Shown one piece after another: positions 10,646 to 64,000 of a stretch of DNA of 64,000 nt. Every line of letters starts with the position of its first letter. The stretch's first letter is position 1. Under the pieces are notes generated by a model, which worked only from the letters and a program-made list of their open reading frames with translations, made no database searches and was not told the origin of the DNA. Source of the DNA: Macrostomum lignano. Lineage: Eukaryota. Location of the stretch: the NCBI GenBank assembly GCA_002269645.1, contig NIVC01000819.1:210328-274327 (forward strand), in the 5' to 3' direction. Made by a program: the position numbers and the translations under genes.

Positions 10646-11318
10646 ATGGCGCCACCCACTGAGTCAACTGTTGCACTCAAGCTGCCCACGTTTTGGGCCA
10701 TGCAGCCACGCGCGTGGTTCATCCAGGCAGAGGCCCAGTTCCAGCTGCGCGGCATCACCCAGGACGACACCAAGTATCACCACTTGGTCGCCTCGCTTGA
10801 TCAACAAACCGCCGAGCGCCTGCTGGACGTTCTGGAAAGCCCTCCGAGCGAGGACAAATACGGCAAACTGAAAGGGCGCCTGCTCGGCACTTTCAGTCTC
10901 ACCCGGCAGCAGCGAGCTAGCCGTTTGCTCAGCATGTCCGGCCTGGGAGATCGCCGGCCGTCCGAGATGATGGACGAGATGCTGGCCCTGCTTGGTGATC
11001 ATCGATCAGCTGCCCGTGGACATCCGGATGGTGCTCGCATCCGCCGACTTCGAAGACCCCCGGGCAGTCGCGCAGCTCGCCGACCAGCTCTGGGTCAGCC
11101 GGCCCCAGCCAGTGGCCGCTTCCGCCCAGTTGGCAGGTCCGCCGGAGGTTTGCGCTGCGCGTCAGGCTGCGCGTCTCCGCACCACGTCGCCCCGGCCTGG
11201 GCACCGCGGCACCCGCGCCCAGGAGCTGTGCTACTTCCACCGCAAGTTCGGCGCGAAGGCTAGGCAATGCGAGCAGCCCTGCAGCTTTCCGGGAAACGGG
11301 CCGGCCGGCCGCCAGTGA
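10646..11318 (+). pseudogene. gag of the CsRn1-like element, frameshifted near 10997
   Basis: LKLPTFW...PRAWFIQAEAQF...GDRRPSEMMDEMLALLGDH in one frame; DQLPVDIRMVL...CYFHRKFGAKARQCEQPC in another. Confidence 0.88.
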
Positions 11319-11366
11319 CCATCGCGGCGGCCGGCAACCTGCTGCTCATCCGGCCGGCGGTTCCTG

Positions 11367-14300
11367 GTGGACACAGGCGCCGAGGTAAGCATTTTCCCAG
11401 CCTCTGCAGATGATGCCCGCGCCCGTTCACCTGGCCCGCCGCTGTTCGCCGCGAACGGCACCCGCATCCGAACCTTCGGCGGCCGCAGCATCACACTGGA
11501 CGTCGGCCTGAAGACCTGCACCTGGCCATTCGTGTTGGCCGAGGTCTCCCGGCCGTTGATCGGCGCCGACTTCCTGCGCCACCACGGCCTGCTGGTGGAC
11601 CTGCCCAACCGCCGCCTTCTGGACGCCGCCTCCCTGGCCAGTGTGCAATTGCTGGCTGGCTCCGGTTCTGCGCCTCAGCTCGCCGCCGCGGTTGCCAGGG
11701 ACCCGTACAGCCGGCTGCTGGCGGAGTTCCCCAGCATCACGGAGCCCAGCTTCAGCAAAGCCACGCCGCGGCACGGCGTGGAGCACTACATACCGACGAC
11801 GGGCCCGCCGATGCATGCTAGAGCGCGCCGCCTGCCGCCCGACAAGCTGGCCGCGGCCAAGGAAGAGTTTCGCAACCTGGAGCAGCTCGGCATTGTGCGG
11901 CGGTCCAGCAGCCCCTGGTCCTCGCCGCTGCACATGGTGCCCAAGACTTCCGGCGGTTGGCGGCCCTGCGGCGATTTCCGGCGGCTCAATGACGCCACGG
12001 TGCCCGACCGCTACCCCGTGCCGCATATCCAGGATTGCTCAGCGCGCCTGAGCGGCTGCACAGTGTTCTCGAAGATCGACCTGGTGCGGGGCTACCACCA
12101 GATCCCGGTCGCGCAAACGGACATCCCGAAGACCGCCGTCATTACACCGTTTGGGTTGTTTGAGTTCCTCCGCATGCCGTTCGGGTTGAAAAATGCGGCA
12201 CAGGCCTTCCAGCGGTTAGTAGATTCGATATGCCAGGACCTGCCGGCCGTCTTCGCGTACATCGACGATTTCCTGGTCGCCAGCAGCAGCCCCGAGCAGC
12301 ACGAGGAGCACCTGCGGAAGCTGTTCCAGCGCCTCGCTGACAACGGCCTGTTGCTCAACCCAGCCAAGTGCCAGTTTGGCCGCAGCGAGATCGATTTCCT
12401 CGGCCACAGGATCAGCGCTGCGGGCGCCATGCCGCTGCCGGACAAGGTCGACGCAGTCGCCAGGTTCGCGCCGCCCACGACGGTGAAGGGTCTCCAGGAG
12501 TTTGCCGGGATGGTGAACTTCTATCACCGCTTCGTGCCCCGCGCAGCCCGTTTGCTGCGCCCGATCTACCAGGCCATGGCCGGCAAGGAGAAGCTGGTGC
12601 GGTGGACGCCGGAGCTGACCGAGGCCTTCGACAAGACCAAGCAGGCGCTGGCCGACGCGATCATGCTGGCGCACCCCAGGCCCGACGCGCCGCTGGCCCT
12701 CACCGTAGATGCTTCTGACACCGCCGTGGGCGCCGTCCTCGAGCAGCGTGTCGGCCCCGCCTGGCAGCCGCTCGCATTCTTCAGCCGGCAGTTGCGACCT
12801 GCGGAGGTAAAGTACAGTGCCTTCGACCGCGAGCTCCTGGCACTGTACCTAGCGGTCCGCCACTTCCGTTACCTCCTTCAGGGGCGCCACTTCACAGCCT
12901 ACACGGACCACAAGCCGTTGGCCGCCGCCATGGCCAAGCTGTCCGACCCGTGGTCCGCTCGGCGGCAGCGGCACCTGGCGTACGTGAGCGAATTCACCAC
13001 GGACGTCCAGCACATCGCCGGCAAAAACAATCCGGTGGCCGACGCGCTGTCCCGCTGCACCGTGGCCAGCGTGCTACCCGGCATCGATTTTGCCGCGATG
13101 TCGCAGGCCCAACATGCCCCGACCGAGTTGCCGCCGCCCGGCTCCGGCCTCCGACTAGAGCGCGTGACCCTCCGCCCAGGCCTGGAGCTGCTCTGCGACG
13201 TCTCCACCGGCCACCCCCGCCCGCTGGTGCCGCCCGAATTCCGACGGCCGGTGTTCGACGCCATCCACGGCCTCGCGCACCCATCAATCCGCAGCTCCCG
13301 CCGCCTCGTTGCAGACCGTTTCGTCTGGCCCGGCCTCAACCGCAACGTCGGCCGTTGGGCTCGCAGCTGCCTCGCCTGCCAGACGACTAAGGTCCAGCAG
13401 CATGTTGTCAGCCCGCCAGACAGCATCCCGGTGCCCCGCGACCGCTTCGCGCACGTGCACATCGACCTGGTGGGCCCGCTTCCGCACTCTCAAGGGTGCT
13501 CGCACCTGCTGACCGTTGTCGACCGGTTCACGTGTTGGCCGGAAGCAATTCCGCTGGCAGACACGTCCGCCGCTACCTGTGCGGCCGCATTCGCGCACTG
13601 GATTGCCCGTTTCGGTGTGCCAAGCGACCTCACGTCAGACCGCGGCCCGCAGTTCACCTCGGAGCTGTGGTCCAACGTGTCCCGCTTGCTTGGCACGCAG
13701 CTGCACCAGACGACGGCCTTCCACCCACAGGCCAACGGGCTTGTGGAGCGGTTCCACCGGCAGCTCAAGGCTTCCCTGATGGCGCGGCTGACGGGGCCGT
13801 CCTGGACTGCCGAGCTGCCCTGGGTGTTGCTCGGCATCCGCACCGCTCCCAAGGAGGATCTCGGCACGTCATCGGCGGAGTTGGTGTACGGAGTCCCACT
13901 GGCGGTGCCGGGCGAGTGTCTGCAGGCCAGCTCGCCTACGGGCCATGACGGGTTCCTCACGCGCCTGCGCCAGGCCGTGCAGGCTTTCCGCCCGCCACCG
14001 ACCTCCCAGCATGGCCGCCGCCCCACCGCCCTGCCTGCTGTCTTGGACACCTGCACGCACGTCTTCGTCCGCCGCGACGGGCACCGACCGGCGCTGCAAC
14101 CGCCTTATCTAGGTCCCTTCAAGGTGCTGGAGCGCGGCGCTAAGGCTTTCCTCCTCGACCTCGTCACTAGGCGGGACTTCGTGTCGGTGGACCGGCTCAA
14201 GCCAGCGGCGCTTGACCCTGCCAGCCCGGTTTCGACGCCTCAAATTCGGCCAAGGGGGCGGCCGCGCGAGCCCACCGTCCCGGGCGCCGCGACGGCCGAA

Positions 14301-14426
14301 CCGCTGCGCCGCCGCCCGCCGCGGCGCCGCCAGCCACACCGCCGTTGCCGTCGAGTACCGGAGGCCACCGCTGGGGGGGAGCCGTGTGGCGGACAAGTGC
14401 AAGCACACCTGAAGACGGCCGTTTAG
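11367..14426 (+). CDS. pol polyprotein (PR-RT-RNase H-integrase-GPY/F), open over 1019 codons
   Basis: DTGA protease; RT LRMPFGL and YIDD; RNase H DAS...[10 protein letters not shown]...TDH; integrase H...H...[25 protein letters not shown]; YLGPF. Confidence 0.96.
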
Positions 14427-24329: not shown

Positions 24330-25612
24330 CAGAGACAGCATGACACCATGCACTGTCATGCTGTGACGCTGTCTTCACCTGCATTCACTGATCTGTTCAA
24401 AGAAGACTTTAGTTTTGAGCTATACCAGAGTGGGTGGCAGGAGGCGCGGATCGACGCGCAGACAACAACAACAACAACACAACAAAATACGCTGTCAGGA
24501 TGGCAAAAGTCAGCGTCACAGGGCGCGCTTCATGGCTTGGGCGCGAACAAAGGCCGCGCCACCGGCAGTGTCCGGGGCGCCGGCGTCAGCCAGCAGACAG
24601 TCAACGTAACGCCGAGTTCGCGCTTGACCTCGCCGGTAGGGTGCCTACAGCGTGAGCAGCAGCACCTCCTGCACCGGCTGTGGCAGTACGACTCGGCGCG
24701 GATGAGATGGCCTGCGAGCTGGAGTCGCCGACGGCGCAGTAGATCGCTTGGACGTGGCAGGCCAGCGCGGCGATAGAGTGCCGCGTTGTTGACTCGCTCG
24801 ACGCCGATGTTGAAGGCGGCGCGCAGCAGGCCAGCGTGCGCCGCATCGACTTGCTGTTCAAGTGAGTCCGTCAGCGTCCAGGTCTCGGCGTTGCACAGCA
24901 GGACGGTCTCGATTACCGCCTGGAACAGCGCCGCCCTCTTGCGGTCCGGTAGGGCCTCGGACTGCAGGACTGCCCTCACAGAACGAAAGGCAGCCCAGGC
25001 AAGCCCGCGGCGGCGTCGCAGGTCCTCGCGAGCGTCTGGAACCAGACCGTCGAGGTAGACGAACTGCTGACATCGCGGGAGCTCGGTCGCCTGCCCGTCA
25101 GCGCCTCGGCAGAAAATTGCAGCCTCGATGTCGTCCGGCACGCAGAGCACAACGGTCTTCTGCGTGTTGACCACCAGGCCGACGCTCGCCGCAACGGCAA
25201 CTAGCCTGTCCAGCTGCCGTTGGGCGCCCTCGACGGTCGAGGACAGCAGGGCGAGGTCGTCAGCGTAGCCAAGCACGCTGAGCCGCTTCTCCGGTTGACG
25301 TCGACCCACGCGTCGCCGCAGCAGAAAGCCGTCGTCGTCGGTAGGAAGAGCAGTCCGCAGCACCCAGTCAAGCACCAGGACGAACAGGAACGGCGCCAGC
25401 GTATCTCCCTGAAGCACTCCGGAGGAGATCTCAAAGGAGTCCTATAGGCCGTCCGGTGTTGTCACAGCAGCTGTCGTATCACGGTACATCGCCATGATGG
25501 CGGAGATCAGCTGCTCAGGCACGTTGTACGCGCAAAGCACCACTGGAAGCACGGCTCTGACAACCGAGTCGAATGCCTTCTTGAAATCGATAAAGATTAG
25601 AATCAGGATCAA
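24330..25612 (-). mobile_element. 5'-truncated RTE-clade LINE
   Basis: IFIDFKKAFDSV...GVLQGDTLAPFLF...LGYADDLALL...VNTQKT RT motifs. One in-frame TAG at about 25444 and a 1-bp deletion at about 24680. (TTG)n run on the minus strand at about 24460-24488. The 3' boundary is approximate. Confidence 0.9.
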
Positions 25613-29614: not shown

Positions 29615-32180
29615 ATGCTCAACCGCTGTCGCCTTGTCGCCGCCACCGCTGCTCGCCTCGGCTGCCGTCGGGGCCTGTCATCTGGCGGAGCTCCGCCGCC
29701 ACCCCGGCCCTCCCGCCTGCTGCTGGCTGCCGCTGTCGGCACCGCCGCTGCCGCCGCCACCGTCGCTTTTGTTGATCAGCGCCGGCGCCTTGCCGCCCTG
29801 CCCGGAGGCGCCCTGACCGCCGTCACCGCCGCTGCCGCCTCGGACAATGTCCAGCCAACTGTCTACAGCGAGACCAAGGACCACGCGCTGTACCTCACCA
29901 TCCATTTGGACCCTCGCGCCGATAAGCGGGAGGTGCTTCGCGTTGCTGCCAATCTGCAGAAGCTGGTGGACAAGGTGGGTAAAGATCTTGGGTGCATTCT
30001 TTTGATGTGCCGCCGCATTGAAGTTCTTAGTCCATCACAGTCCTTTGATGTGCCGCCGCTCTCAAATTCATCACAATTCTTTGATGTGCCGCCTGATGTG
30101 CCGCCGATCTCAAGTCCATCACAAAGTCCTTTGATGTGCCGCCGCTCTCAAGTCTATTACAGAGTCATTTGATGTGCCGCCGCTCTCAAGTCTATTACAG
30201 AGTCATTTGATGTGCCGCCGCTCTCAAGTCCATCACAGAGCCCTTTGGTGTGCCGCCTCTCTCAAGTCCATCACAGAGCCCTTTGGTGTGCCGCCTCTCT
30301 CAAGTCCATCACAGAGCCCTTTGATGTGCCGCCTCTCTCAAGTCCATCACAGAGCCCTTTGATGTGCCACCGCTCTTGTCTTAACCTTCTTTCACACCCC
30401 CACCCATCCCAGGTGTGCCCACCGGATCTGCGGGATGAATCTGACGAGACCTGGGCGGGCGTGGGCTTCGGCTACAGCTTCTACCGGGCCGCTGTCGGCC
30501 AGTCGGGCAGCGCCGCCTCCGTGGACTTCAGCTATCCGCACAGGCGCGGGGCTCTGGGCGAACTGCCGAGCACTGGCGGCGATTTGTTCATCCACGCCAA
30601 GTCTAACCAGGTGCGTTTCTGCGCTGCCACAGGGTCAGAAATCACCAGATGATTCATTTGTGTGGATTTATAAAGTTCTTGTTGCACTTTTAGCTAAGCA
30701 GACACTGTATTCCACTAGGGAGCCAGTGAGAGTGGCCATTGGGGATGAAAATGGTACAGTTAATTTCTATCTCGGCTGCACCCAGGTGAGCAAGCTGTTT
30801 GAGCTGTGCCAAGCCGTGACGGCCGCCATGCCCAAGGGCTCGGTCCGCTCATTCGAGGACATCTACAGCTTCGTGTACCGGAACGGGCGCGACCTTAGCG
30901 GCTTCATCGACGGCACGGAGAACGCGGCTGACGAGGAGAGTCGCAAGCAGATCGCTGTGGCCCGGGGCGGCGGCAGCTTCGTCATCACGCAGCGCTGGAT
31001 TCACGACCTGGCCAAGATCCGGGACTCCAAGCCGGCCGAGCTGGAGAGCTTCGTTGGCCGGGACATCACGGACAGCACCGAGCTGCGGCGCAAGTCCATC
31101 TCTTCTCACGTGGCCAGGATGACTGGGGGCAACGCCTTCGAGCAGAAGAAGCAGTTCGAGATTGTGCGCCAATCCATGCCTTATGGGTGAGGATTGACGG
31201 CCATGCTTGGACCCGCTTCTCAGGGCGGTTCCCGATTGGTGTCAGGGTGATTCCCGATTAGTGTCAGGGCGATTCCCGATTGGTGTCAGGGCGATTCCCG
31301 ATTGGTGTCAGGATGATTCCCGATTGGTGTCAGGGCGATTCCCGATTGGTGTCAGGATGATTCCCGATTGGTGTCAGGGCGATTCCCGATTGGTGTCAGG
31401 GCGATTCCCGATTGGTGTCAGGGTGATTCCCAATTGGTGTTAAGGCGATTCCCGATGGGTGTCAGGATGATTCCCGATTAGTGTCAGGGCGATTCCCGAT
31501 TAGTGTCAGGGCGATTCCCGATTGGTGTCAGGGCGATTCCCGATTGGTGTCAGGATGATTCCCGATTGGTGTCAGGGCGATTCCCGATTGGTGTCAGGGC
31601 GATTCCCGATTGGTGTCAGGGTGATTCCCAATTGGTGTTAAGGCGATTCCCGATGGGTGTCAGGATGATTCCCGATTAGTGTCAGGGCGATTCCCGATTA
31701 GTGTCAGGGTGATTCCCGATTAGTGTCAGGGCGATTCCCGATTAGTGTCAGGGTGATTCCCGATTGGTGTCAGGGCGATTCCCGATTGGTGTCAGGATGA
31801 TGATTCCCAATTGGTGTCAGGGCGATTCTCGATTAGTGTCAGGGTGATTCCCGATGGGTGTCAGGGCGATTCCCGATTAGTGTCAGGATGATTCCCAATT
31901 GGTGTCAGGGCGATTCCCCATTGTTGTCCGGCCGATTCCCTATTCTCAGTCGCACCTGCAATCGCCAAGCCGCTCCCCAACCCCCAGCACGGTGTCCGGC
32001 GAGTCCGGTCTGTTCTTCATCGCCTACGCGGCCAGCCCGGACAACTTCAACTTCATGCTGGACCGCATGGTCGGCAAGGGCAGCGACTCGCACTCCGACG
32101 ACATCATGCGGATCACCCGCTGCGTGGCTGGCAACTACTGGTACTTCCCGCCCACCTCTGAGCTGGCCAAGTTCGCCTGA
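29615..32180 (+). CDS. DyP-type (dye-decolourising, YfeX-like) haem peroxidase with N-terminal targeting extension (383 aa)
   Basis: Exons 29615-29974, 30413-30610, 30786-31186 and 31988-32180, GT-AG and phase-compatible. Family motifs PSTGGDLFIH, GRDLSGFIDGTEN (GxxDG distal Asp), SFVITQRWIH, VGR, SHVARM (proximal His), IVRQSMPYG (distal Arg), GLFFIAY and GNYWYFP. Confidence 0.94.
30000..30375. repeat. 38-bp minisatellite in DyP intron 1
   Basis: About 9 imperfect units of CTTTGATGTGCCGCCGCTCTCAAGTCCATCACAGAGCC. Confidence 0.92.
31225..31920. repeat. 22-bp minisatellite (GATTCCCGATTGGTGTCAGGGC)n in DyP intron 3
   Basis: About 31 units. Confidence 0.95.
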
Positions 32181-32214
32181 GTGAGCTGGCCTGAGGCGGC
32201 AACCTGATACTGAA

Positions 32215-32300
32215 TAGAGATAGAGATAGATAGAGAGATAGATACATAGATACATAGATACATAGACACATAGATAGATACATAGATAGATAGATGATAG
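32215..32300. repeat. (ATAG/ATAC)n microsatellite downstream of DyP
   Basis: Visible tetranucleotide run. Confidence 0.9.
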
Positions 32301-33864
32301 ATGACCTTGCCACACCAAGGTCATCAGAGAGAAATGCCCGCACTTGGTTGCTCCTCTGCTAACGAATAGTTTCTATCAACAACAAAAAAACTATGAATTA
32401 GTTTGCTGATTTAAAAAACATTTCTTGGAATAGATTATTACATTTATTCTTAAATATTCACACACTTGTAATCGTTGCGACATTCTATTGACACTGTGTC
32501 TGCTTGCTCTTATTCATCCAGCTATAACGTACTCTCTGTACTTTATACTGCAGTGCCGCAGCGAATCGAAATGATAAAAAAGAAAAGGATCCTCCGTCTT
32601 CCTTCAGCTCTGCGCTGCACTGGGTTTTTATAGTTTTATTAGTAATCTGATTCCGCATCTGATCTCTATTTTTTGCTATAATACTTTTCCAAATGACTAG
32701 TTTGTTATAATAGTAACAGTTCCGGTGTTAATGATTGGTATGGCTATCTTAAAGACGAGGCACGTCGATTTCGTTTTTCATCTTGTTCTTTGATTTTGTT
32801 GCCTAGGTTTTCTATAGGAATAAATCAATTGTGCTCTTTTTAAAGACTTCACATTCGCTTCTCTGAACGTATTAGAAACATTAAAGCTGAGATATTGTTG
32901 TTTTTTTCTTTCAGTTTGCTTGGCTTTCTTGCTAACTCGAGTGTTAAGTATTATCTTATTGGTGCCTGAATTGGTGCCGGTGCCGCGGTGCGTCACTGGC
33001 CAAGCCTGGTAGATCTCTCTCTACATTGCCTTTCCTAGGTCATTATCATTGCAAGCTTATCATAGTTGCAGCGTGACAGCGTTGAAACTTGACTGTGTAG
33101 TTGCCTGTGCATTACCTGTGTATTGCTGCTGTGCATTGAACGATTACAGATCCGAGAATTTTCTCAGTCTGTGTAAATGATATCTGCAGGTTTCTTTTAT
33201 ATGAGCTAGTGTGTGCAGCGTTCCTTGTTTTATGCCTGCACATGAACAATCTAAGCCCAGTAAAAAGTTCTGTGTACATGTAGTGCAGGGGCCCCGAATA
33301 CAGAACTGTTTTCTGACACTCCTGACAGCTTTATGTTCTACAAAAGTTGATGCAGCATGTACCAAATATCAAAGATGAGTATTTTGCGAGTCAAAGTATA
33401 AAAACGTGAGATACATATGTACATGTACGGTCTTTTTTGTGACAAACGAATAAACGAACCGCATCGTGGAACGTACAAATTAAATTTGGCGTAATTTATC
33501 AATTTAAATTAAATGACCCATCAAATGCAAATGTACATGTAATGTCATACTGTATGTTTATTATGACTGCAAATAAGAAAAAAACTCATTGAACTAAACA
33601 GGCGCGAATCCAGAAATTTTTTTTGGGGGGAGGTGTTGCGTACGGCTTGTACGCCGGTTAGGGTTCTTGCGTTCTGATTGGCTGGGGGGTTTTGTCTGTC
33701 TGCCCAGACCGGCCTAGGCCGGGTGGGGGGTTTTCTGAATCATGCTGGTTAGTAGGTAAATTATAATATAAGTGCGCACCGGCCTTTCAAGCCTTTGTTA
33801 CTTTTCTACCCTGCAATCGCTTCTCGCATCGTATTCATTTGGCCACGCTGCCTCAAAGTACAAC

Positions 33865-34960
33865 ATGGCGACGAGTCTGAGCATTTCCGAGCCACGCGTG
33901 TTTCTCGCCCACCCAGGACAGCCACACACGCCTTGGAATCGTTGGATCGAAGGATTCAAGATTTACCTGGAGGCCTTGAATCTAAATGAAGCATCGGATG
34001 CACGCAAGAAGGCGATTCTCATTCATCTGCTGGGCGAGGAGGGCCAGAGAGTCTACGCGCTGAGAAATTTGCCCACGACGAGCGTTGATACGTTTGACAA
34101 GCTGGTGGCTGCACTGAAAACGATCTTCGGTCAGTCGCACAGCACGATCAGCAACCGCTACAAGTTCAAGTCGCGCGCCCAGATGCCAGGCGAGCCAGTC
34201 AGCCAGTTCGTCGACGCCCTCCGAGAACTCGCGGCAGACTGCGAATATGGCGTGACTAGATGATCCGGGACCAGATCATCGAGAAGACCCATTCGCCGTG
34301 CATCCGAGAGCGACTGCTCATGGAGAAGGAGCTCGAGCTGGATAGGGCGATGACATTGGCGGTTCAGGTCGAATCTGCAATCAACGACGCCAAGAAGCTG
34401 CGCGACGGCAAGAGCGACAAGGACGAGTCCCGCATCCAGAAGGTCAGCCAGCGTATGCCATCACGCAAGGGACCCAAGCATGCGGCACCGCAGAAATCCG
34501 GCACAGAGACACGGTGCGGCAACTGCGGGAGGGCCGGGCACGCTGCCCGCGCCTTAGAGTGTCCAGCGAAAGACAAGACCTGCTTGCACTGCCACAAGGT
34601 CGGACACTTCAAAGCTTGCTGCCGACAGCGACGCCAGGTTCGCACCGTAAAGGACGAAGACGACGAGCCATTCGTAGTATCTGCGGTAGAATACGAAGCG
34701 TCGCTCCTTAACTTCGCGACGTGCAGCATCGCTGACATCGACGTCAGGCTCCTATTGGACACGGGCTCAAGAGTCAACATCATCAACGAGAAGACCGTGA
34801 AACGCCTGCTGAAGCAACCGGTCATCACGCCGACTCCGAAGCAGCTGTTCTCGTACACAGGCTCTGCAATTGACGTGCTCGGGACCGCAGAGCTGTGCGT
34901 TGTGCACCGCGGCAAGTCCGCCATCTGCCGCTTCTTCATCGCACGACGAGGTGCCTCAAT
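33865..34960 (+). pseudogene. gag-protease of the Mag-like element, with two frameshifts (about 34255 and 34955)
   Basis: W..WIEGFKIYL...KKAILIHLLGEEG...RYKFKSRAQ...ADCEYG, then MIRDQII...CGNCGRAGH...C...CLHCHKVGHFKAC...LLDTGS, in different frames. Confidence 0.88.
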
Positions 34961-37771
34961 CCGCACCTCAAGCTGGGATTCTCAATCCGAGTCAACGCAA
35001 TCAACAACATCGATGATATCGCTGGAGAGTTCCCGGGAATCTTCGACGGCATCGGTATGGCCAAGAAGTTTTGCCATCGACCACAGCTGCGCCAGGATGC
35101 GACACCGACAGTTCAGCCGCTGCGCCGGGTGCCGCTGGCACTTCAGGACCGCGTGAAGGACGAGCTAAGCAAGATGGAGGCCGCAGGTGTCATCGAGAAG
35201 ATTGATGCCTCTCCCTGGGTGTCCAATCTAGTCGTATCCAAGAAGAAGAATGGCGACCTGCGACTGTGCGTTGATCTGCGCAACTGCAACCAAGCGATCA
35301 ACCCGGATAAGTTTCCCGTGCCGACCCAGGAGGAGCTGGCCGCAGAGTTTGCAGGCGCGCAGATCTTCAGCAAGCTGGACCTGAAGCAAAGCTACCTGCA
35401 GATCCCACTGCACCCCGGCAGTAGGCAGCTGACCGCGTTCATCACTCACTGCGGGCTCTACCAGTGCACGAGGGTCCCGTTCGGCATGTCCAGTTCTGGT
35501 GCCTGTTTTCAGAAAATCCTGTCAACCGTTCTGGCCGACATCAAGGGTGTCCGGCACTCAGTGGACGACATTGTCATTCACGGCGTCAACTCTGACGAGC
35601 ACGGCAAGCGGCTTCAGACAGTACTCGAACGTCTCAGCGAAAACGGGCTGACGCTGAACAAGGAGAAATGCCAGATCGGCGTCCCGGAGATCGTGTTCTT
35701 GGGCTGCAGGATCTCAGCCGATGGAGTTCGACCGTCCAAGTCTAACATCGAAGATGTGCTCCGCATCCCGGCACCGACGACAGCACGGGGCGTCTCGTCA
35801 TTCCTGGCAACCGTCAACTACTTCGCCAAGTTCATACCCGACTTCGCCAAGACGGCGAGACCACTGCGAGAGCTGCTCAAGAAGGACACCGTCTTCCACT
35901 GGACGAGCGAATGCAACGCTGCTTTCGCCGAGCTCAAGCAACAGCTGACGAGTCCGCCGGTGCTAAGCCACTTCGACTGCAACGCTGACACCATCGTCGA
36001 GTGCGACGCGTCTGACTTCGCGCTTGGCGCGGTGCTGCTTCAACGCGTAGGCGAGTCAGAGAAGCCGGTGGCCTACGCCTCGCGAGCACTGACGCCAACG
36101 GAGTCCAGATACTCAGCTAGCGAGAAAGAGGCCCTGGCGTGCATCTGGGCTCTCGAGCGCTGGCACATCTACACCTACGGCAGACGGCTGACTTTGCGCA
36201 CTGACCATTCGGCTCTCAAGGCACTGTTGTGTACCCAAGGCACCGGGCACAAGCCGCTGCGCATCCACCGATGGAACGACCGGCTCCTGCAGTACAACTT
36301 CAGCGTCGAGTATAAGCCTGGAAAGGACAACGTTGTGCCAGACTTCCTGTCCCGTTTCGAGCGACCACCCGAGTCGACAGACAGCGACGATGACGACGAC
36401 GAGATCGCCGACATCCACCAGGTGCTAGACGGGATTCTATCGGCCGAGCTGCTGGACAAGCACTCGCAGGCCGATCCGCTCATTCGCAGTGTCTCCGCAA
36501 AGCTTCAAGCCAACTGGAAGGAGCCGCCAACAGATGAGGAGAAAATCTTCTTCAAGCTCCGAGACGAGATGTCAACGGTCGGCAACTTCCTGGTTCGCGG
36601 CAACCGCGTGGTTGTGCCCGAGAGTCTGCGCGCCACTGCACTAGCGCTGATCCACCAGGGACATTGCGGCATCGTCAAGATGAAGCACCGAGCTCGCGAT
36701 ACCGTCTGGTGGCCGGGAATCGACGCCCAACTGGAGGATCTGGCCAAGTCCTGCGTCAGCTGCTGCTTGGCGGAGAAGTGGAAGCGACCCGCTGCTCCAT
36801 CGCAGACGACCGAGTTTCCCAAAGAGCCGTGGCACACGATTCAGCTTGACATCTTCGGCGAGATCCACGAAGCGCCTGCCAGCAGCCGATTCGCAATCGT
36901 TGCCATTGACCTGCACTCCAAGTGGCCAGAGATTCGGACTACGGCTTCGGTGACGGCCGAGGTCATCGCCGACTTCCTCAAGGACCTGTTCGCTCGATGG
37001 GGACTGCCAGGCAAGATCGTGACTGACAACGGGCCGCAGTTCACCAGCCACGCCTTCGAGGAATTTCTAGCCAGCCACGGTGTTCAGCATGCGAAAACCT
37101 CGCTGTACCATCCGCAGTCAAACTCGAATGTCGAGCGCCTCAACCGCACCCTGAAGGAGTCGCTGAAGGCGCACCTCAAGGACGGCATCAGCTTCAAGGA
37201 GGCAATCCGCGAGTTCCTGCAATGCTACCGGTCGACAGCGAATGCAACCATCAGCCTGACGCCGGCTGAGCTGATGGTCGGTCGGCCGTTTCGAGGACCT
37301 CTGAGCCAGTGGAGTCGAGGCATCCGCCCCCTGAGTCCAACGGTGCCATCGGGGACCGAGCGTCGAGTCCAGGCCAACAAGGAGAAGGCCAGGCTGGCCA
37401 CCGACCGGCGCCGAGGAGCCCGACCCTCGAGACTGCAGGCTGGTGACTCCGTGCGCGTCCGCAGGCCACAGACGGCCAACAAGCTGGCGACAAGGCTCGG
37501 CGAGACTCGAAGGATCACCCGGCGGCTGGGCCCGGAGTCCTGGCTGCTAGACGACGGCACGCGATGGCACTCTGACAACCTGGTTCGCGTTTCGAGTACA
37601 CCGTCAGCGGATAGCGACACGACTGATGCCGGACTCGGTGCTCTGATGGCGCCAACACCAGCGCCAGCGCTAGCGCCGCCGGCAAGGGCGCCGACCAACG
37701 AGACGCCGCCGACTCCGCCGAGACGAAGCGACCGAACCAGAAGAGCTCCGGTCCGGTTCAGCCCGAGTTGA
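34960..37771 (+). CDS. pol (RT-RNase H-integrase) of the Mag-like element, open frame
   Basis: LCVDLR, FSKLDL, RVPFG and SVDD (RT); CDAS...EKEALA...TDH (RNase H); HQGHCG...CVSC, QLDIFG, TDNGPQF and NVERLN (integrase). Confidence 0.94.
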
Positions 37772-53423: not shown

Positions 53424-60498
<7,075 letters not shown>

Positions 60499-60689: not shown

Positions 60690-60828
60690 TGTGCCTGTGT
60701 GTCTGTCTGTCTGTCTGTCTGTCTGTCTGCTGTCTGCCTGTCTGTCTGTCTGTCTGCCTGTCTGTCTGTGTGTGTCTGTCTGTCTGTCTGTCTGTCTGTC
60801 TGCCTGTCTGTCTGTGTGTGTCTGTCTG

Positions 60829-60867
<39 letters not shown>

Positions 60868-61305
60868 GTGTCTGTCTGTCTGTCTGCCTGTCTGTCTGTG
60901 TGTGTCTGTCTGTCTGTCTGTCTGTCTGCCTGTCTGTCTGTGTGTGTCTGTCTGCCTGTCTGTCTGTGTGTGTCTGTCTGCCTGTCTGTCTGTGTGTGTC
61001 TGTCTGTCTGTCTGTCTGTCTGTGTGTGTGTGTCTGTCTGTGTGTCTGTCTGTCTGTCTGTCTGTGTGTCTGCGTCTGTCTGTCTGTCTGTGTGTGTGTG
61101 TCTGTCTGTCTGTCTGTGTGTGTGTGTCTGTCTGTCTGTCTGTCTGCCTGTCTGTCTGTGTGTGTCTGTCTGTCTTTCTGTCTGTCTGTCTGTCTCCCTG
61201 TCTTTCTGACTGTCTGACTGTGTGTCCGTCTTAGTGTTTATGACTGCCTGTTTGTCTGTCTGTCTGTTGTCTGTCGTCTGTCTGTTGTCTGTCTGTCTGT
61301 CTCAT
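60690..61305. repeat. (GTCT)/(GT) compound microsatellite
   Basis: Visible run after RTF1. Confidence 0.96.
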
Positions 61306-62069
61306 ATCCATTCACTCACTGAAAACAAGCGCTGTTTACGTGCCAGTGTTCAGTCAATCGAATAACAGGCTTCTCGACCGACTCAATAGCCAGTCATTGT
61401 TTGCGATCAAGGTTCAGGGCTGCCAGGGCAGATGAAGTGGAGTGGGGGTTGGTGTGTCTGTCCCCGGAACCCAGGCCAGCAGTCGGCTTTGTCTTGCAGC
61501 TGTGTTGCTACAAAAATAGTTCAGAGTTCAGCGATCCGCGAGTTCTCCGCCCTGCAGAAAAACCAGTTTTTGTCCGATAGATTTTTCCGCTTCGTCCGAT
61601 GCCCCAGCTTTCTGTTTGGTCCGTGACAGCCCGCGCGAGGCTGGAGTCAGTTTGTCATGGCTAATGCCGGATGTTTGTTTCAGTCGTTTTTTACGAATCA
61701 AGTTGTCAATCAGTGTGTGTTTGTCATCTCCAGCGTCGGCCCAGTCTCCCTGTCCATCAGTTTGTATTTTGCATTTTTTCATATTTTTAATAAATTACCT
61801 TAAGCTTTATAAAATTAGTGAATCTATCAGCCCCCCCCCCTAAATTTTCTTTATTCTGTCCCTGTGTACAATTCTTGGCTCGATCTGCTGCGTTAGAAAC
61901 TTCGCACTGATGACAGACCCCCTTGCTAAGTGACTGCTTAAAGCTGATTAATTATCTATTAATTACATGTGTTGGCTCGTGCTCTGTTCGACTGGCTGAA
62001 TTATGCGATAGATCAGACCTTCGCTTTTGTTTTTTTGATTGTCTGTTTGCTTACCTGTGCTTTGTCTTC

Positions 62070-64000
62070 CTGTGCTTTGAGTCTCTTCCTGCCCTTTGAG
62101 TCTCTTCCTGTCCTTTGAGTCTCTTCCTGTCCTTTGAGTCTCTTCCTGTCCTTTGAGTCTCTTCCTGTCCTTTGAGTCTCTTCCTGTCCTTTGAGTCTCT
62201 TCCTGTCCTTTGAGTCTCTTCCTGTCCTTTGAGTCTTCCTGTCCTTTGAGTCTCTTCCTGTCCTTTGCGTCTTCCTGTCCTTTGCGTCTCTTCCTGTCCT
62301 TTGTGTCTTCCTGTCCTTTGAGTCTCTTCCTGCCCTTTGAGTCTCTTCCTGTCCTTTGAGTCTCTTCCTGTCCTTTGCGTCTCTTCCTGTCCTTTTGAGT
62401 CTCTTCCTGTCCTTTGTGTCTTCCTGTCCTTTGCGTCTCTTCCTGTCCTTTGTGTCTTCCTGTCCTTTGAGTCTCTTCCTGCCCTTTGAGTCTCTTCCTG
62501 TCCTTTGAGTCTCTTCCTGTCCTTTGCGTCTCTTCCTGTCCTTTGAGTCTCTTCCTGTCCTTTGCGTCTCTTCCTGTCCTTTGAGTCTCTTCCTGTCCTT
62601 TGAATCTTCCTGTCCTTTGAGTCTCTTCCTGTCCTTTGTGTCTTCCTGTCCTTTGAGTCTCTTCCTGTCCTTTGCGTCTTCCTGTCCTTTGCGTCTCTTC
62701 CTGTCCTTTGAGTCTCTTCCTGTCCTTTGAATCTTCCTGTCCTTTGAGTCTCTTCCTGTCCTTTGTGTCTTCCTGTCCTTTGAGTCTCTTCCTGTCCTTT
62801 GCGTCTTCCTGTCCTTTGCGTCTCTTCCTGTCCTTTGTGTCTTCCTGTCCTTTGAGTCTCTTCCTGTCTTTTGAGTCTCTTCCTGTCCTTTGAGTCTCTT
62901 CCTGTCCTTTGAATCTTCCTGTCCTTTGAGTCTCTTCCTGTCCTTTGTGTCTTCCTGTCCTTTGAGTCTCTTCCTGTCCTTTGTGTCTTCCTGTCCTTTG
63001 AGTCTCTTCCTGTCCTTTGTGTCTTCCTGTCCTTTGAGTCTTCCTGTCCTTTGAGTCTCTCCTGTCTTTTGAGTCTCTTCCTGTCCTTTGAGTCTCTTCC
63101 TGTCTTTTGAGTCTCTTCCTGTCCTTTGTGTCTTCCTGTCCTTTGAGTCTCTTCCTGTCTTTTGAGTCTCTTCCTGTCCTTTGAGTCTTCCTGTCCTTTG
63201 AGTCTCTTCCTGTCCTTTGAGTCTCTTCCTGTCCTTTGCGTCTCTTCCTGTCCTTTGAGTCTCTTCCTGTCCTTTGCGTCTTCCTGTCCTTTGAGTCTCT
63301 TCCTGCCCTTTGAGTCTCTTCCTGTCCTTTGCGTCTTCCTGTCCTTTGAGTCTCTTCCTGTCTTTTGAGTCTCTTCCTGTCCTTTGTGTCTTCCTGTCCT
63401 TTGAGTCTCTTCCTGTCTTTTGAGTCTCTTCCTGTCCTTTGTGTCTTCCTGTCCTTTGAGTCTCTTCCTGTCTTTTGAGTCTCTTCCTGTCCTTTGCGTC
63501 TCTTCCTGTCCTTTTGTTCTTCCTGTCCTTTGAGTCTTCCTGTCCTTTGAGTCTCTTCCTGTCTTTTGAGTCTCTTCCTGTCCTTTGCGTCTCTTCCTGT
63601 CCTTTGTGTCTTCCTGTCCTTTTGAGTCTCTTCCTGTCCTTTGAGTCTCTTCCTGTCTTTTGAGTCTCTTCCTGTCCTTTGCGTCTCTTCCTGTCTTTTG
63701 AGTCTCTTCCTGTCCTTTGAATCTTCCTGTCTTTGAGTCTCTTCCTGTCCTTTGTGTCTTCCTGTCCTTTGAGTCTCTTCCTGTCTTTTGAGTCTCTTCC
63801 TGTCCTTTGCGTCTCTTCCTGTCCTTTGTGTCTTCCTGTCCTTTGAGTCTTCCTGTCCTTTGAGTCTCTTCCTGTCTTGAGTCTCTTCCTGTCCTTTGCG
63901 TCTCTTCCTGTCCTTTGTGTCTCCTGTCCTTTGAGTCTCTTCCTGTCCTTTGAGTCTCTTCCTGTCTTTTGAGTCTCTTCCTGTCCTTTGCGTCTCTTCC
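62070..64000. repeat. 17/19/20-bp satellite (GAGTCTCTTCCTGTCCTTT)n running off the window end
   Basis: About 100 units with GAG/GCG/GTG and length variants. Confidence 0.97.

What the first reader, a model, noticed from the sequence alone, without database searches (positions are those of the whole stretch)
29615..32180. Intron-containing animal DyP-type peroxidase with a bipartite mitochondrial-type leader
Seen: a complete DyP fold with GFIDG, proximal His (SHVAR) and distal Arg (VRQSMPYG), split by three GT-AG introns, so it is not bacterial contamination. The first about 55 residues are Arg/Ala/Leu-rich with no acidic residue (MLNRCRLVAATAARLGCRRGLSS...), followed by a hydrophobic stretch (LLLAAAVGTAAAAATVAFV) and a basic cluster. 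Established: DyPs are mainly bacterial and fungal; E. coli YfeX oxidises porphyrinogens and was first described as releasing iron from haem; presequence-plus-hydrophobic leaders sort proteins such as yeast cytochrome c peroxidase to the intermembrane space. Inference: a mitochondrial haem peroxidase acting in peroxide removal or porphyrin/haem turnover, possibly from an old horizontal transfer. How unusual it is among animals needs a search.
Basis: partly seen in the sequence, partly recalled or inferred. Interest (0 to 1): 0.75.

Follow-up and report, generated by a model that had tools for sequence, protein, structure and literature searches.

The report
Flatworm DyP haem peroxidase, mitochondrial-type leader
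This is a real, intron-containing gene of the flatworm Macrostomum lignano for a bacterial-type (DyP/YfeX-like) haem peroxidase; the gene and its animal family are already catalogued, but its conserved 75-80-residue leader looks like a two-part mitochondrial sorting signal, which nobody appears to have tested.

Summary
Four exons (29615-29974, 30413-30610, 30786-31186, 31988-32180, + strand) joined by three GT-AG introns give a 383-aa protein. It is 100% identical to UniProt A0A1I8HSY2, "Dyp-type peroxidase", from Macrostomum lignano. It is a complete class B/P DyP: it has the GFIDG motif (D228), H294 and R314, and its AF2 model matches KpDyP at TM 0.90.

It is not rare. Orthologues of 375-390 aa occur in molluscs, brachiopods, bryozoans, annelids, nemerteans, priapulids, hemichordates, Placozoa, other flatworms, nematodes and acanthocephalans. 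Protist homologues also exist. The family was described in 2022 as the "unexplored" subclass P1, and a cestode member has been shown to have peroxidase and catalase activity.

Oyster, acorn worm and schistosome share 5-7 intron positions, so the gene is old in animals and not a recent transfer.

Across 90 homologues the leader has one architecture:
- about 34 basic, acid-free residues
- a Gly/Ala-rich, marginally hydrophobic segment
- a linker
- a V-x-A-A motif 4-5 residues before the domain in most

Paralogues with classical short signal peptides look different. I read the leader as a bipartite signal for the intermembrane space. That is an inference with no localisation data, and the cestode preprint reads the same helix as an export signal.

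The parts
29615..29974 (+). Exon 1 (codons 1-120): the whole leader plus the first ~41 residues of the DyP domain
   Evidence: ATG with in-frame stops upstream. Donor is AAG|GTGGGT. Homologous intron-less contigs L005/L001 end their first block at 29976/29977.
29615..29716 (+). Presequence-like N-region, residues 1-34 (MLNRCRLVAATAARLGCRRGLSSGGAPPPPRPSR): 7 Arg, no acidic residue, R-3-type motif R19-G-L21|S22
   Evidence: In the family the median is 34 aa, 7 K/R and 0 D/E, and 86% of 90 homologues have no acidic residue. An R-3-like motif occurs in 48/87 near position 22, and the amphipathic moment exceeds shuffles in 89%.
29717..29773 (+). Gly/Ala-rich hydrophobic sorting segment, residues 35-53 (LLLAAAVGTAAAAATVAFV), followed by D54 and R56-R58 (29780-29788)
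   Evidence: The family's best 12-mer is 50% Gly+Ala with marginal hydrophobicity. The AF2 model places a low-confidence helix at residues 45-60.
29828..29839 (+). A72-A75 (VTAAAA|SDNVQ): candidate second processing site of the small-x-small type, just before the folded domain
   Evidence: 76/90 homologues have AA within 12 residues before the domain, and 66 of those 76 have it 4-5 residues before the conserved Q. V is the commonest residue (45/76) two positions before the first A. Bivalve 2-DE spots match the form cut here.
29975..30412 (+). Intron 1 (438 nt, phase 0), mostly a 38-bp minisatellite (30094-30376, 7.4 copies)
   Evidence: The position is not shared with oyster, Saccoglossus or Schistosoma.
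30413..30610 (+). Exon 2 (codons 121-186)
30611..30785 (+). Intron 2 (175 nt, phase 0)
   Evidence: The position is not shared with the three other animals.
30786..31186 (+). Exon 3 (codons 187 to the first two bases of codon 320). Carries GFIDG with distal Asp D228 (30909-30911), proximal His H294 (31107-31109) and distal Arg R314 (31167-31169).
   Evidence: H294 is invariant, and D228 and R314 are >=90% conserved in a 44-sequence alignment. They align with KpDyP D143 and R232.
31187..31987 (+). Intron 3 (801 nt, phase 2), almost entirely a 22-bp minisatellite (31220-31944, ~33 copies)
31988..32180 (+). Exon 4 (last base of codon 320 to codon 383, plus TGA at 32178-32180)
   Evidence: AATAAA-like signals at 32819 and 32880. 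An (AGAT)n microsatellite lies at 32214-32302, downstream of the stop codon, in the presumed 3' UTR.

Best explanation
A single-copy nuclear gene of Macrostomum lignano encodes the 41-kDa precursor of a class B/P (subclass P1, YfeX-like) DyP-type haem b peroxidase.

Shown by sequence and model: the catalytic domain (about residues 80-383) has the two-ferredoxin-like DyP fold, with proximal His294 and the distal Asp228/Arg314 pair that cleaves H2O2 heterolytically in class B DyPs.

Inferred: the 75-79-residue leader is a bipartite mitochondrial signal.
- Residues 1-34 act as a matrix-targeting presequence, with a possible MPP cut after L21.
- The basic flank plus the Gly/Ala-rich segment 35-53 arrests the precursor in the inner membrane (stop-transfer).
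- A second cut near A72-A75 releases a soluble enzyme of about 34 kDa and pI about 6 into the intermembrane space.
- There the enzyme takes up haem and consumes H2O2 while oxidising a small reductant. Porphyrinogens or cytochrome c are candidates only.

Exon 1 carries both the leader and the start of the domain, and the next in-frame Met is M201. A leaderless isoform therefore cannot arise by internal initiation in this species, unlike relatives that have a phase-0 intron at the leader/domain boundary and annotated leaderless isoforms.

Confidence by part: DyP haem peroxidase about 0.95; mitochondrial import about 0.65; intermembrane space, soluble or anchored, about 0.55.
For: Enzyme identity:
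- Pfam Dyp_perox_C 2.4e-30 and TIGR01413 6.6e-40, covering residues 80-379.
- PDB sequence matches to KpDyP, YfeX and VcDyP at about 1e-37 to 1e-35, with the catalytic motifs aligned.
- AF2 mean pLDDT 86.7, with most 10-residue blocks of the domain at about 95 or above. Foldseek TM 0.90 to KpDyP/VcDyP and 0.88 to YfeX.
- H294 is invariant; D228 and R314 are >=90% conserved.
- A cestode homologue binds hemin and shows peroxidase and catalase activity.

Leader:
- 90 homologues share a median 80-aa leader. The n-region is 34 aa with 7 K/R and 0 D/E.
- Amphipathic moment exceeds shuffles in 89%, and an R-3-like motif occurs in 48/87.
- The hydrophobic segment is 50% Gly/Ala and lies about 33 residues before the domain.
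- A V-x-A-A motif sits 4-5 residues before the domain in 66 of the 76 sequences that carry it.
- Paralogues with genuine signal peptides differ: n-region 0-10 aa, a Leu/Ile/Phe-rich h-region, and a 17-43-aa leader with at most about 20 residues between the h-region and the domain.
- Protist homologues (Mucochytrium, an MMETSP transcript) also have basic-plus-hydrophobic leaders.

Leader removal in vivo:
- Mytilus gill spot at 30.4 kDa, pI 6.0, and quagga mussel spot at 27.0 kDa, pI 5.7.
- Calculated values: 42.1 kDa / pI 8.9 for the precursor, 39.4 kDa / pI 7.2 after an MPP-only cut, and 33.8 kDa / pI 6.0 after the AA motif.
Against: - There is no localisation experiment for any member. No dedicated predictor (TargetP, MitoFates, DeepLoc) could be run.
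- The M. lignano presequence itself is only weakly amphipathic (z 0.15 against shuffles), is Pro/Ala-rich, and its composition is skewed by GC3 of 0.84.
- The authors of the only biochemical study read the homologous helix in Echinococcus as a signal peptide for export. A Taenia extracellular-vesicle proteome lists the enzyme.
- The gap of roughly 20-33 residues between the hydrophobic core and the putative second cleavage site is, from memory, longer than in cytochrome b2 or c1.
- The 2-DE spots could be leaderless splice isoforms rather than processed precursor. One identification rests on 2 peptides.
- The hydrophobicity values use scale values recalled from memory.
Confidence: 0.55

Rival explanations
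1. The leader is an ER signal anchor or long signal peptide. The enzyme enters the secretory pathway and acts extracellularly or at the body surface against environmental or host-derived peroxide.
For: The EmDyp preprint predicts a TM helix near the N-terminus and calls it a signal peptide for export. Secreted DyPs exist in fungi and as Tat substrates in bacteria. The family does contain secretory-looking paralogues (P0126, P0106, P0114, P0118, Trichinella P0122). A Taenia EV proteome lists the enzyme.
Against: From textbook knowledge, signal peptides have short n-regions. Here the n-region is about 34 aa, strongly basic, acid-free, S/T-rich and often carries an R-x-(F/L)-S-T motif. The h-segment is 50% Gly/Ala, and by an approximate scale it would not integrate at the ER. 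The conserved small-residue motif lies about 20-30 residues beyond the hydrophobic core rather than next to it. Family members with true signal peptides look clearly different.
Confidence: 0.15
2. The protein is imported into mitochondria but not released. After removal of the presequence it stays anchored in the inner membrane by residues 35-53, with the catalytic domain facing the intermembrane space. Alternatively it is cut inside the Gly/Ala-rich helix by a rhomboid protease, as in yeast Ccp1.
For: The leader evidence is the same as for the best explanation. From general knowledge, Gly/Ala-rich helices are typical rhomboid substrates. The long linker between helix and domain would suit a tether.
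Against: The two bivalve spots (27-30 kDa, pI 5.7-6.0) fit loss of the whole leader. They do not fit an anchored form of 39 kDa / pI 7.2. The AA motif conserved 4-5 residues before the domain suggests a defined processing site.
Confidence: 0.15
3. Matrix enzyme: the hydrophobic segment does not arrest import, and the peroxidase works in the matrix next to ferrochelatase and the respiratory chain.
For: The segment is only marginally hydrophobic. The related transcript L001 appears to have an MTS-like start without a hydrophobic segment, though it has a frame problem.
Against: The hydrophobic segment and its basic N-flank are conserved in nearly all 90 leaders across phyla. That conservation is not expected if the segment is functionless.
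Confidence: 0.08
4. Recent horizontal transfer or bacterial contamination: the gene is a bacterial yfeX that landed in this assembly or lineage.
For: Closest solved structures are enterobacterial. Source databases name the animal genes 'YfeX-like'.
Against: The gene has three spliceosomal introns and eukaryotic retrotransposon neighbours. It is 50-64% identical to orthologues across more than 10 animal phyla, against about 35% to leaderless ~300-aa sequences that are probably bacterial. Oyster, Saccoglossus and Schistosoma share 5-7 intron positions and phases. Subclass P1 also holds Amoebozoa, Excavata and SAR.
Confidence: 0.02

Closest known systems
Class B / class P DyP-type peroxidases: E. 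coli YfeX (5gt2), Klebsiella KpDyP (6fks), Vibrio VcDyP (5de0)
   Same: About 300-aa two-ferredoxin-like fold (TM 0.88-0.90). Shares GXXDG with the distal Asp, the distal Arg in VRQS(L/M)PYG, and the proximal His. About 31-37% identity. YfeX is a peroxidase that also oxidises protoporphyrinogen in vitro.
   Different: The bacterial enzymes are cytoplasmic, and class B is described as made without an N-terminal extension (PMC8230527). This protein has a 75-79-aa leader, spliceosomal introns and an animal genomic context.
Metazoan/protist DyP subclass P1 (Sugano-lab classification, PMC9719856), including Echinococcus EmDyp (bioRxiv 10.1101/2022.11.07.515413)
   Same: This protein is one of the Platyhelminthes sequences of that kind (UniProt A0A1I8HSY2). 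It shares the domain, the catalytic residues, a total length of 375-390 aa, and the N-terminal helix seen in cestode relatives (P0123: MNGLRRLLSLARPAVPITRRILPPTIGALGVYILM). EmDyp binds hemin, oxidises DAB and luminol, shows catalase activity and is induced under aerobic conditions.
   Different: The 2022 tree paper calls P1 'unexplored' and does not mention mitochondria or signal peptides. The EmDyp authors interpret the helix as an export signal and describe alternative 5' splicing giving a cytosolic form. The M. lignano gene has no such option, because the leader and domain start share one exon and the next Met is M201. Its three introns are all at positions not shared with other animals.
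Bipartite intermembrane-space presequences: yeast cytochrome b2, cytochrome c1, cytochrome c peroxidase Ccp1 (textbook knowledge, not tested here)
   Same: The order of elements matches: a basic, acid-free presequence with an MPP-type motif, a basic flank, a moderately hydrophobic stop-transfer segment, and a second processing site with small residues. The total length of about 80 aa resembles cytochrome b2. Like Ccp1, the cargo is a haem b peroxidase.
   Different: There is no sequence homology, since Ccp1 belongs to the peroxidase-catalase superfamily. The spacing between hydrophobic core and second site is longer. Processing enzymes and localisation are unknown.
Dictyostelium DyPA (7o9j)
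   Same: A eukaryotic class B/P DyP with the same fold (TM 0.79-0.82, 27-28% identity).
   Different: DyPA belongs to subclass P4, lacks any leader and is cytoplasmic by EYFP tagging.

Membership tests
DyP-type peroxidase superfamily (Pfam Dyp_perox, TIGR01413) | Profile match above the curated cut-off over the whole domain | tested here: met
   TIGR01413 137.4 bits (cut-off 100.5), residues 80-379 against profile positions 1-323/323. PF20628 105.9 bits (cut-off 20).
DyP-type peroxidase superfamily | GXXDG motif with the distal catalytic Asp | tested here: met
   G225-F-I-D228-G229. D228 is >=90% conserved in 44 sequences and aligns with KpDyP D143.
DyP-type peroxidase superfamily | Proximal haem-ligand His and distal Arg | tested here: met
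   H294 is invariant and R314 is >=90% conserved. R314 aligns with KpDyP R232, and H294 aligns with the His of the KpDyP TSHLSRV motif.
DyP-type peroxidase superfamily | Two-domain ferredoxin-like alpha+beta fold | tested here: met
   AF2 mean pLDDT 86.7. Foldseek E 1e-29 and TM 0.90 (target-normalised) to 6fkt/5de0.
DyP-type peroxidase superfamily | Binds haem b and oxidises substrates with H2O2 | not testable with these tools
   Shown only for a cestode homologue in a preprint.
Class B / P (YfeX-like) | Closest to class B structures; domain of about 300 aa | tested here: met
   The top sequence and fold hits are all KpDyP, YfeX, VcDyP or Enterobacter DyP.
Class B / P (YfeX-like) | Produced without an N-terminal extension and cytoplasmic, as class B is described in PMC8230527 | tested here: not met
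   A 75-79-aa leader precedes the domain. This is the main departure from the bacterial class.
Subclass P1 (eukaryotic; PMC9719856) | Groups with metazoan, amoebozoan, excavate and SAR sequences in a phylogeny | tested here: inconclusive
   I built no tree. By similarity tiers, animals are at 44-64%, protists (Mucochytrium, Echinamoeba cluster) at about 37-41%, and leaderless ~300-aa sequences from metagenomes or unnamed assemblies at about 35%. The paper lists 16 Platyhelminthes branches in P1.
Bipartite mitochondrial intermembrane-space presequence | N-terminal basic, acid-free, amphipathic targeting segment | tested here: met
   Residues 1-34 have 7 Arg and 0 Asp/Glu. In the family, 86% have no acidic residue and 89% have a moment above shuffles. 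M. lignano itself is weak on amphipathicity, z 0.15.
Bipartite mitochondrial intermembrane-space presequence | MPP cleavage motif (R-2/R-3) | tested here: inconclusive
   The pattern R19-G-L|S22 is present, and an R-3-like pattern occurs in 48/87 homologues near residue 22. This is a pattern match only, with no cleavage data.
Bipartite mitochondrial intermembrane-space presequence | Moderately hydrophobic sorting segment with a basic N-flank, then a second processing site | tested here: met
   Segment 35-53 is preceded by R31/R34. The family segment is 50% Gly/Ala. The AA motif occurs in 76/90, 4-5 residues before the domain in 66 of them. The mature size and pI in two bivalve 2-DE studies fit this cut.
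Bipartite mitochondrial intermembrane-space presequence | Membrane-potential-dependent import and intermembrane-space residence | not testable with these tools
   No experiment exists in the searched literature. There were 0 papers with 'Dyp-type peroxidase' plus 'mitochondrial proteome', and none of the 25 top-ranked papers listed in the six-term search held 'intermembrane space'.
Classical ER signal peptide | Short n-region, Leu-rich h-region of 7-15 aa, cleavage a few residues after the h-region | tested here: not met
   The n-region is 34 aa, the h-region is Gly/Ala-rich, and the candidate site is about 20 aa downstream. Paralogues that do meet these criteria exist for contrast.

The most novel reading that the evidence does not exclude
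The DyPs of subclass P1 are an ancestral eukaryotic intermembrane-space haem peroxidase. They would be a non-homologous counterpart of yeast cytochrome c peroxidase, placed beside the last steps of porphyrin synthesis. They were retained in most invertebrate phyla and some protists and lost in vertebrates, tunicates and fungi. This would be the first DyP assigned to an organelle, and it would overturn the 'secreted' reading given for the parasite enzymes now proposed as drug targets.
Probability: 0.4. Interest if true: 0.6.

Novelty: new member of a known kind. Interest (0 to 1): 0.4.

Why it matters
Mitochondrial peroxide handling in animals is usually described in terms of peroxiredoxins, glutathione peroxidases and, in some tissues, catalase. 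A haem peroxidase of bacterial type in the intermembrane space of most invertebrate lineages would add a component that the vertebrate and insect models lack.

There is also a practical side. Mammals lack DyPs, and parasitic flatworms have been proposed to use theirs against host or endogenous oxidants, so the Echinococcus enzyme has been suggested as a drug target. Whether that enzyme faces the host (secreted) or the respiratory chain (mitochondrial) changes how such a target would be approached.

Macrostomum lignano is a laboratory flatworm in which, to my knowledge, transgenesis and RNAi are available, so the question is directly testable there.

As it stands, the gene is an already catalogued member of a described family. 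Only the reading of its leader is new.

Tried and rejected
1. A leaderless paralogue. P0003 (318 aa) looked like a cytosolic isoform. On its contig L001, the 'start' is a GTG called by a prokaryote-style gene finder with no in-frame ATG, and an MTS-like ORF sits in another frame. I rejected it as evidence for a leaderless form.

2. Public genomic contigs. An exact look-up of the window protein found nothing on record, so I could not look for paralogous copies with ancestral introns.

3. Literature on DyP localisation in mitochondria:
- 'Dyp-type peroxidase' plus 'mitochondrial proteome' gave 0 papers.
- In the six-term search, none of the 25 top-ranked papers listed held 'intermembrane space'.
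- Searches by gene identifier found only the EmDyp preprint and a schistosome ovary single-cell paper.

4. Dispersed repeats. I tested whether the intronic minisatellites belong to a dispersed repeat family within the window. Both are confined to their introns.

5. Second copy. A search for another DyP copy in the window found none.

6. Weak Pfam hit. A Glyco_hydro_4 hit (E 0.0046, below cut-off) was dismissed as noise.

7. Peroxisomal targeting. The C-terminus is ...AKFA, with no SKL-type tripeptide here or in the orthologues I inspected.

8. Phylogeny. I built no tree with bacterial classes, because most library representatives carry no taxon names. I relied on identity tiers and the published tree.
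Full report
**1. The observation.** The region holds a four-exon gene on the + strand.
- Joining 29615-29974, 30413-30610, 30786-31186 and 31988-32180 gives a 1152-nt reading frame of 383 codons plus TGA.
- The three introns are GT...AG, with phases 0, 0 and 2.
- Exons are GC-rich (0.63-0.70; GC3 0.84) compared with the introns (0.46-0.55) and the flanks.
- In-frame stops lie just upstream of the ATG, and there is only one copy in the window.
- Two intron-less contigs assembled from sequencing runs of close relatives (89% and 85% protein identity) align to the window as four blocks that end at the predicted junctions. This supports the splice sites.
- Intron 1 is largely a 38-bp minisatellite and intron 3 a 22-bp minisatellite of about 33 copies. 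Both are confined to their introns.

**2. Whose gene it is.** The spliced product is 100% identical over its full length to UniRef A0A1I8HSY2, "Dyp-type peroxidase", Macrostomum lignano. This is a free-living flatworm (Platyhelminthes, Macrostomorpha). The gene lies between two Ty3/gypsy-type pol ORFs (11367-14426 and 34895-37771) and near a reverse-transcriptase fragment. "Animal, not contamination" is correct.

**3. What the protein is.**
- Residues 80-379 match the DyP superfamily model end to end: TIGR01413 at 137 bits against a cut-off of 100.5, and Pfam Dyp_perox_C at 2.4e-30.
- The best solved relatives are class B enzymes: Klebsiella KpDyP, E. coli YfeX, Vibrio VcDyP and Enterobacter DyP, at E about 1e-37 to 1e-35. 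The GFIDG, SHVAR and VRQSMPYG motifs align with the KpDyP catalytic motifs.
- In a 44-sequence alignment H294 is invariant, and D228 and R314 are at least 90% conserved.
- An AlphaFold2 model has mean pLDDT 86.7, with nearly all 10-residue blocks of the domain at 93 or above. It superposes on KpDyP and VcDyP at TM 0.90 and on YfeX at 0.88.
- The first 78 residues are of low confidence apart from a helix at 45-60.

The enzyme identity is therefore secure. Activity is inferred, but a cestode homologue binds hemin and shows peroxidase and catalase activity.

**4. How unusual it is.** It is not unusual.
- Proteins of 375-390 aa at 50-64% identity come from many molluscs, a brachiopod, bryozoans, annelids, a nemertean, a priapulid, three hemichordates, Trichoplax and many trematodes. 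NCBI mostly names them "dye-decolorizing peroxidase YfeX-like".
- More distant members (40-45% identity) include cestodes, nematodes (Trichinella, Trichuris) and acanthocephalans. Protist relatives reach about 37-41%: Mucochytrium quahogii, an MMETSP transcript, and a cluster containing an Echinamoeba sequence.
- A 2022 survey already placed 51 metazoan sequences in the tree and defined subclass P1 as Metazoa plus Amoebozoa, Excavata and SAR. It noted their absence from fungi, tunicates and vertebrates and called the subclass unexplored.
- In a library of 1.84 billion representatives, only 62 clusters reach E <= 1e-30. Leaderless sequences of about 300 aa from metagenomes and unnamed assemblies, probably bacterial, sit near 35% identity.

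**5. Age of the gene.** I mapped exons exactly for oyster, Saccoglossus and a schistosome.
- The three share five intron positions with the same phases, and oyster and Saccoglossus share two more.
- One shared intron is phase 0 and lies exactly at the boundary between leader and catalytic domain.
- A gene with that structure was therefore present in the protostome-deuterostome ancestor. A transfer into a particular animal lineage is excluded, and the protist relatives point to a still older eukaryotic gene.
- M. lignano has none of these introns. Its three introns are at positions not seen in the other three species. This points to wholesale intron loss, perhaps through a retrocopy, followed by gains. 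I did not pursue it further.

**6. The leader.** This is the part of the finding that still carries interest. In M. lignano:
- Residues 1-34 hold 7 Arg and no acidic residue, and contain R19-G-L|S22, an R-3-type pattern.
- Residues 35-53 are the hydrophobic stretch.
- D54 is the first acidic residue, followed by R56-R58.
- A72-A75 precede the domain.

Across 90 full-length homologues the same plan recurs:
- The median leader is 80 aa.
- The n-region has a median of 34 aa with 7 Lys/Arg, 8 Ser/Thr and 0 Asp/Glu, and 86% have no acidic residue.
- The amphipathic moment exceeds sequence shuffles in 89%, with median z 1.4.
- An R-x-(F/L/I/Y/M/V)-(S/T/A)-(S/T/A/G) motif occurs in 48 of 87, near residue 22.
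- The hydrophobic segment is half Gly/Ala and only marginally hydrophobic.
- About 33 residues separate that segment from the domain.
- An AA dipeptide occurs in 76 of 90, 4-5 residues before the conserved Q that opens the domain in 66 of those 76. Val is the commonest residue two positions before the first Ala.

The family supplies its own contrast. Some paralogues (Schistosoma P0114 and P0118, P0126, P0106, Trichinella P0122) carry textbook signal peptides. These have n-regions of 0-10 aa, Leu/Ile/Phe-rich cores with at most 8% Gly/Ala, and total leaders of 17-43 aa with at most about 20 residues between the core and the domain. The long leader is thus a different device. Its order of elements matches the bipartite presequences of cytochrome b2, cytochrome c1 and Ccp1. 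That comparison rests on textbook knowledge and was not tested here.

**7. Is the leader removed?** Two independent bivalve gill 2-DE studies identified the enzyme. Their tables state that these are observed values.
- Mytilus: 30.4 kDa, pI 6.0.
- Quagga mussel: 27.0 kDa, pI 5.7.

For the Mytilus orthologue I calculate:

| Form | Mass | pI |
|---|---|---|
| Precursor | 42.1 kDa | 8.9 |
| After an MPP-type cut only | 39.4 kDa | 7.2 |
| After the AA motif | 33.8 kDa | 6.0 |

The abundant tissue form therefore lacks the whole leader, including the hydrophobic segment, and is soluble enough for 2-DE. This fits two-step processing. It would also fit a leaderless splice isoform: NCBI annotates such isoforms in Littorina and Tubulanus, and the Echinococcus gene makes one by alternative 5' splicing. 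In M. lignano that route is closed, because the leader and the first 41 residues of the domain share exon 1 and the next Met is M201.

**8. Mechanism proposed.** The precursor is imported through the presequence pathway, arrested at residues 35-53, and trimmed twice. This releases a haem b peroxidase of about 34 kDa into the intermembrane space, where it removes H2O2 using D228/R314 chemistry.
- The electron donor is unknown.
- YfeX oxidises protoporphyrinogen in vitro. From general knowledge, the last porphyrinogen-handling enzymes of animals face this compartment. That makes porphyrinogens a candidate, and ferrocytochrome c is another by analogy with Ccp1. Both are speculation.
- Confidence: peroxidase identity about 0.95, mitochondrial import about 0.65, intermembrane space about 0.55.

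**9. Rivals.**
- *Secretory reading (0.15).* This is the published interpretation for the cestode enzyme, and a Taenia vesicle proteome lists the protein. It is disfavoured by the n-region, the composition of the core, the spacing of the candidate site and the contrast with true signal peptides.
- *Anchored or rhomboid-cut intermembrane-space form (0.15), or matrix form (0.08).* Both remain possible.
- *Contamination or recent transfer.* Excluded.

**10. Verdict.** The gene is already in UniProt, its animal family has been described, and one flatworm member has been assayed. Interest is therefore moderate. What is new is a well-supported but untested reading of the conserved leader as a bipartite mitochondrial signal. 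That reading conflicts with the only published interpretation and can be settled with standard experiments.

Noticed in passing
window 29975-30412, 30611-30785, 31187-31987; loci L002, L003, L004: All three M. lignano DyP introns are at positions not shared with oyster, Saccoglossus or Schistosoma. Those three share 5-7 intron positions and phases among themselves, including a phase-0 intron exactly at the leader/domain boundary. This suggests loss of all ancestral introns (possibly a retrocopy) and later gains. Two of the new introns are almost wholly minisatellite.
   Followed up: partly
window 10646-14426 (+) and 33772-37771 (+): Two long Ty3/gypsy-type pol ORFs (RVT_1, RNase H, integrase zinc-binding and core domains) of 1019 and 958 aa flank the DyP gene. 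The first is preceded by a DUF7041 ORF at 10646-11263, possibly gag-related. They look intact enough to be recently active elements.
   Followed up: partly
window 24530-25417 (-): A 295-aa ORF with a partial reverse-transcriptase domain (RVT_1, 9.5e-09). It is probably a decayed retroelement.
   Followed up: no
window 55600-56319 and 58504-59430 (+): Two ORF pieces each match half of a Plus-3 domain (Rtf1-type). They are probably exons of one host gene downstream of the DyP locus.
   Followed up: no
window 59500-60084, 60695-61302, 62065-64000: Large short-period tandem arrays: 18 bp x 32, (CTGT)n x 158, and a 19-bp unit x 105 that runs off the end of the window. The last one explains the extreme AT and GC skew there. 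Together with the intronic arrays, minisatellites are a striking feature of this window.
   Followed up: partly
locus L001 1-330 (Logan SRR30276804): A related Macrostomum-like DyP transcript has an MTS-like ORF (MLARGASYLLNRSGVSAVRSVRGFAST...) in a different frame from the domain, and no hydrophobic segment. This could be an assembly frameshift or a paralogue with a simpler, matrix-type leader.
   Followed up: partly
proteins P0114, P0118, P0142, P0145, P0126, P0106, P0122 (not in the window): Schistosomes, Trichinella and some unnamed invertebrates carry extra DyP paralogues with classical short signal peptides. The family has apparently been retargeted to the secretory pathway several times.
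   Followed up: partly
window 32214-32302: An (AGAT)n / 16-bp compound microsatellite lies 34 nt downstream of the DyP stop codon, in the presumed 3' UTR.
   Followed up: no
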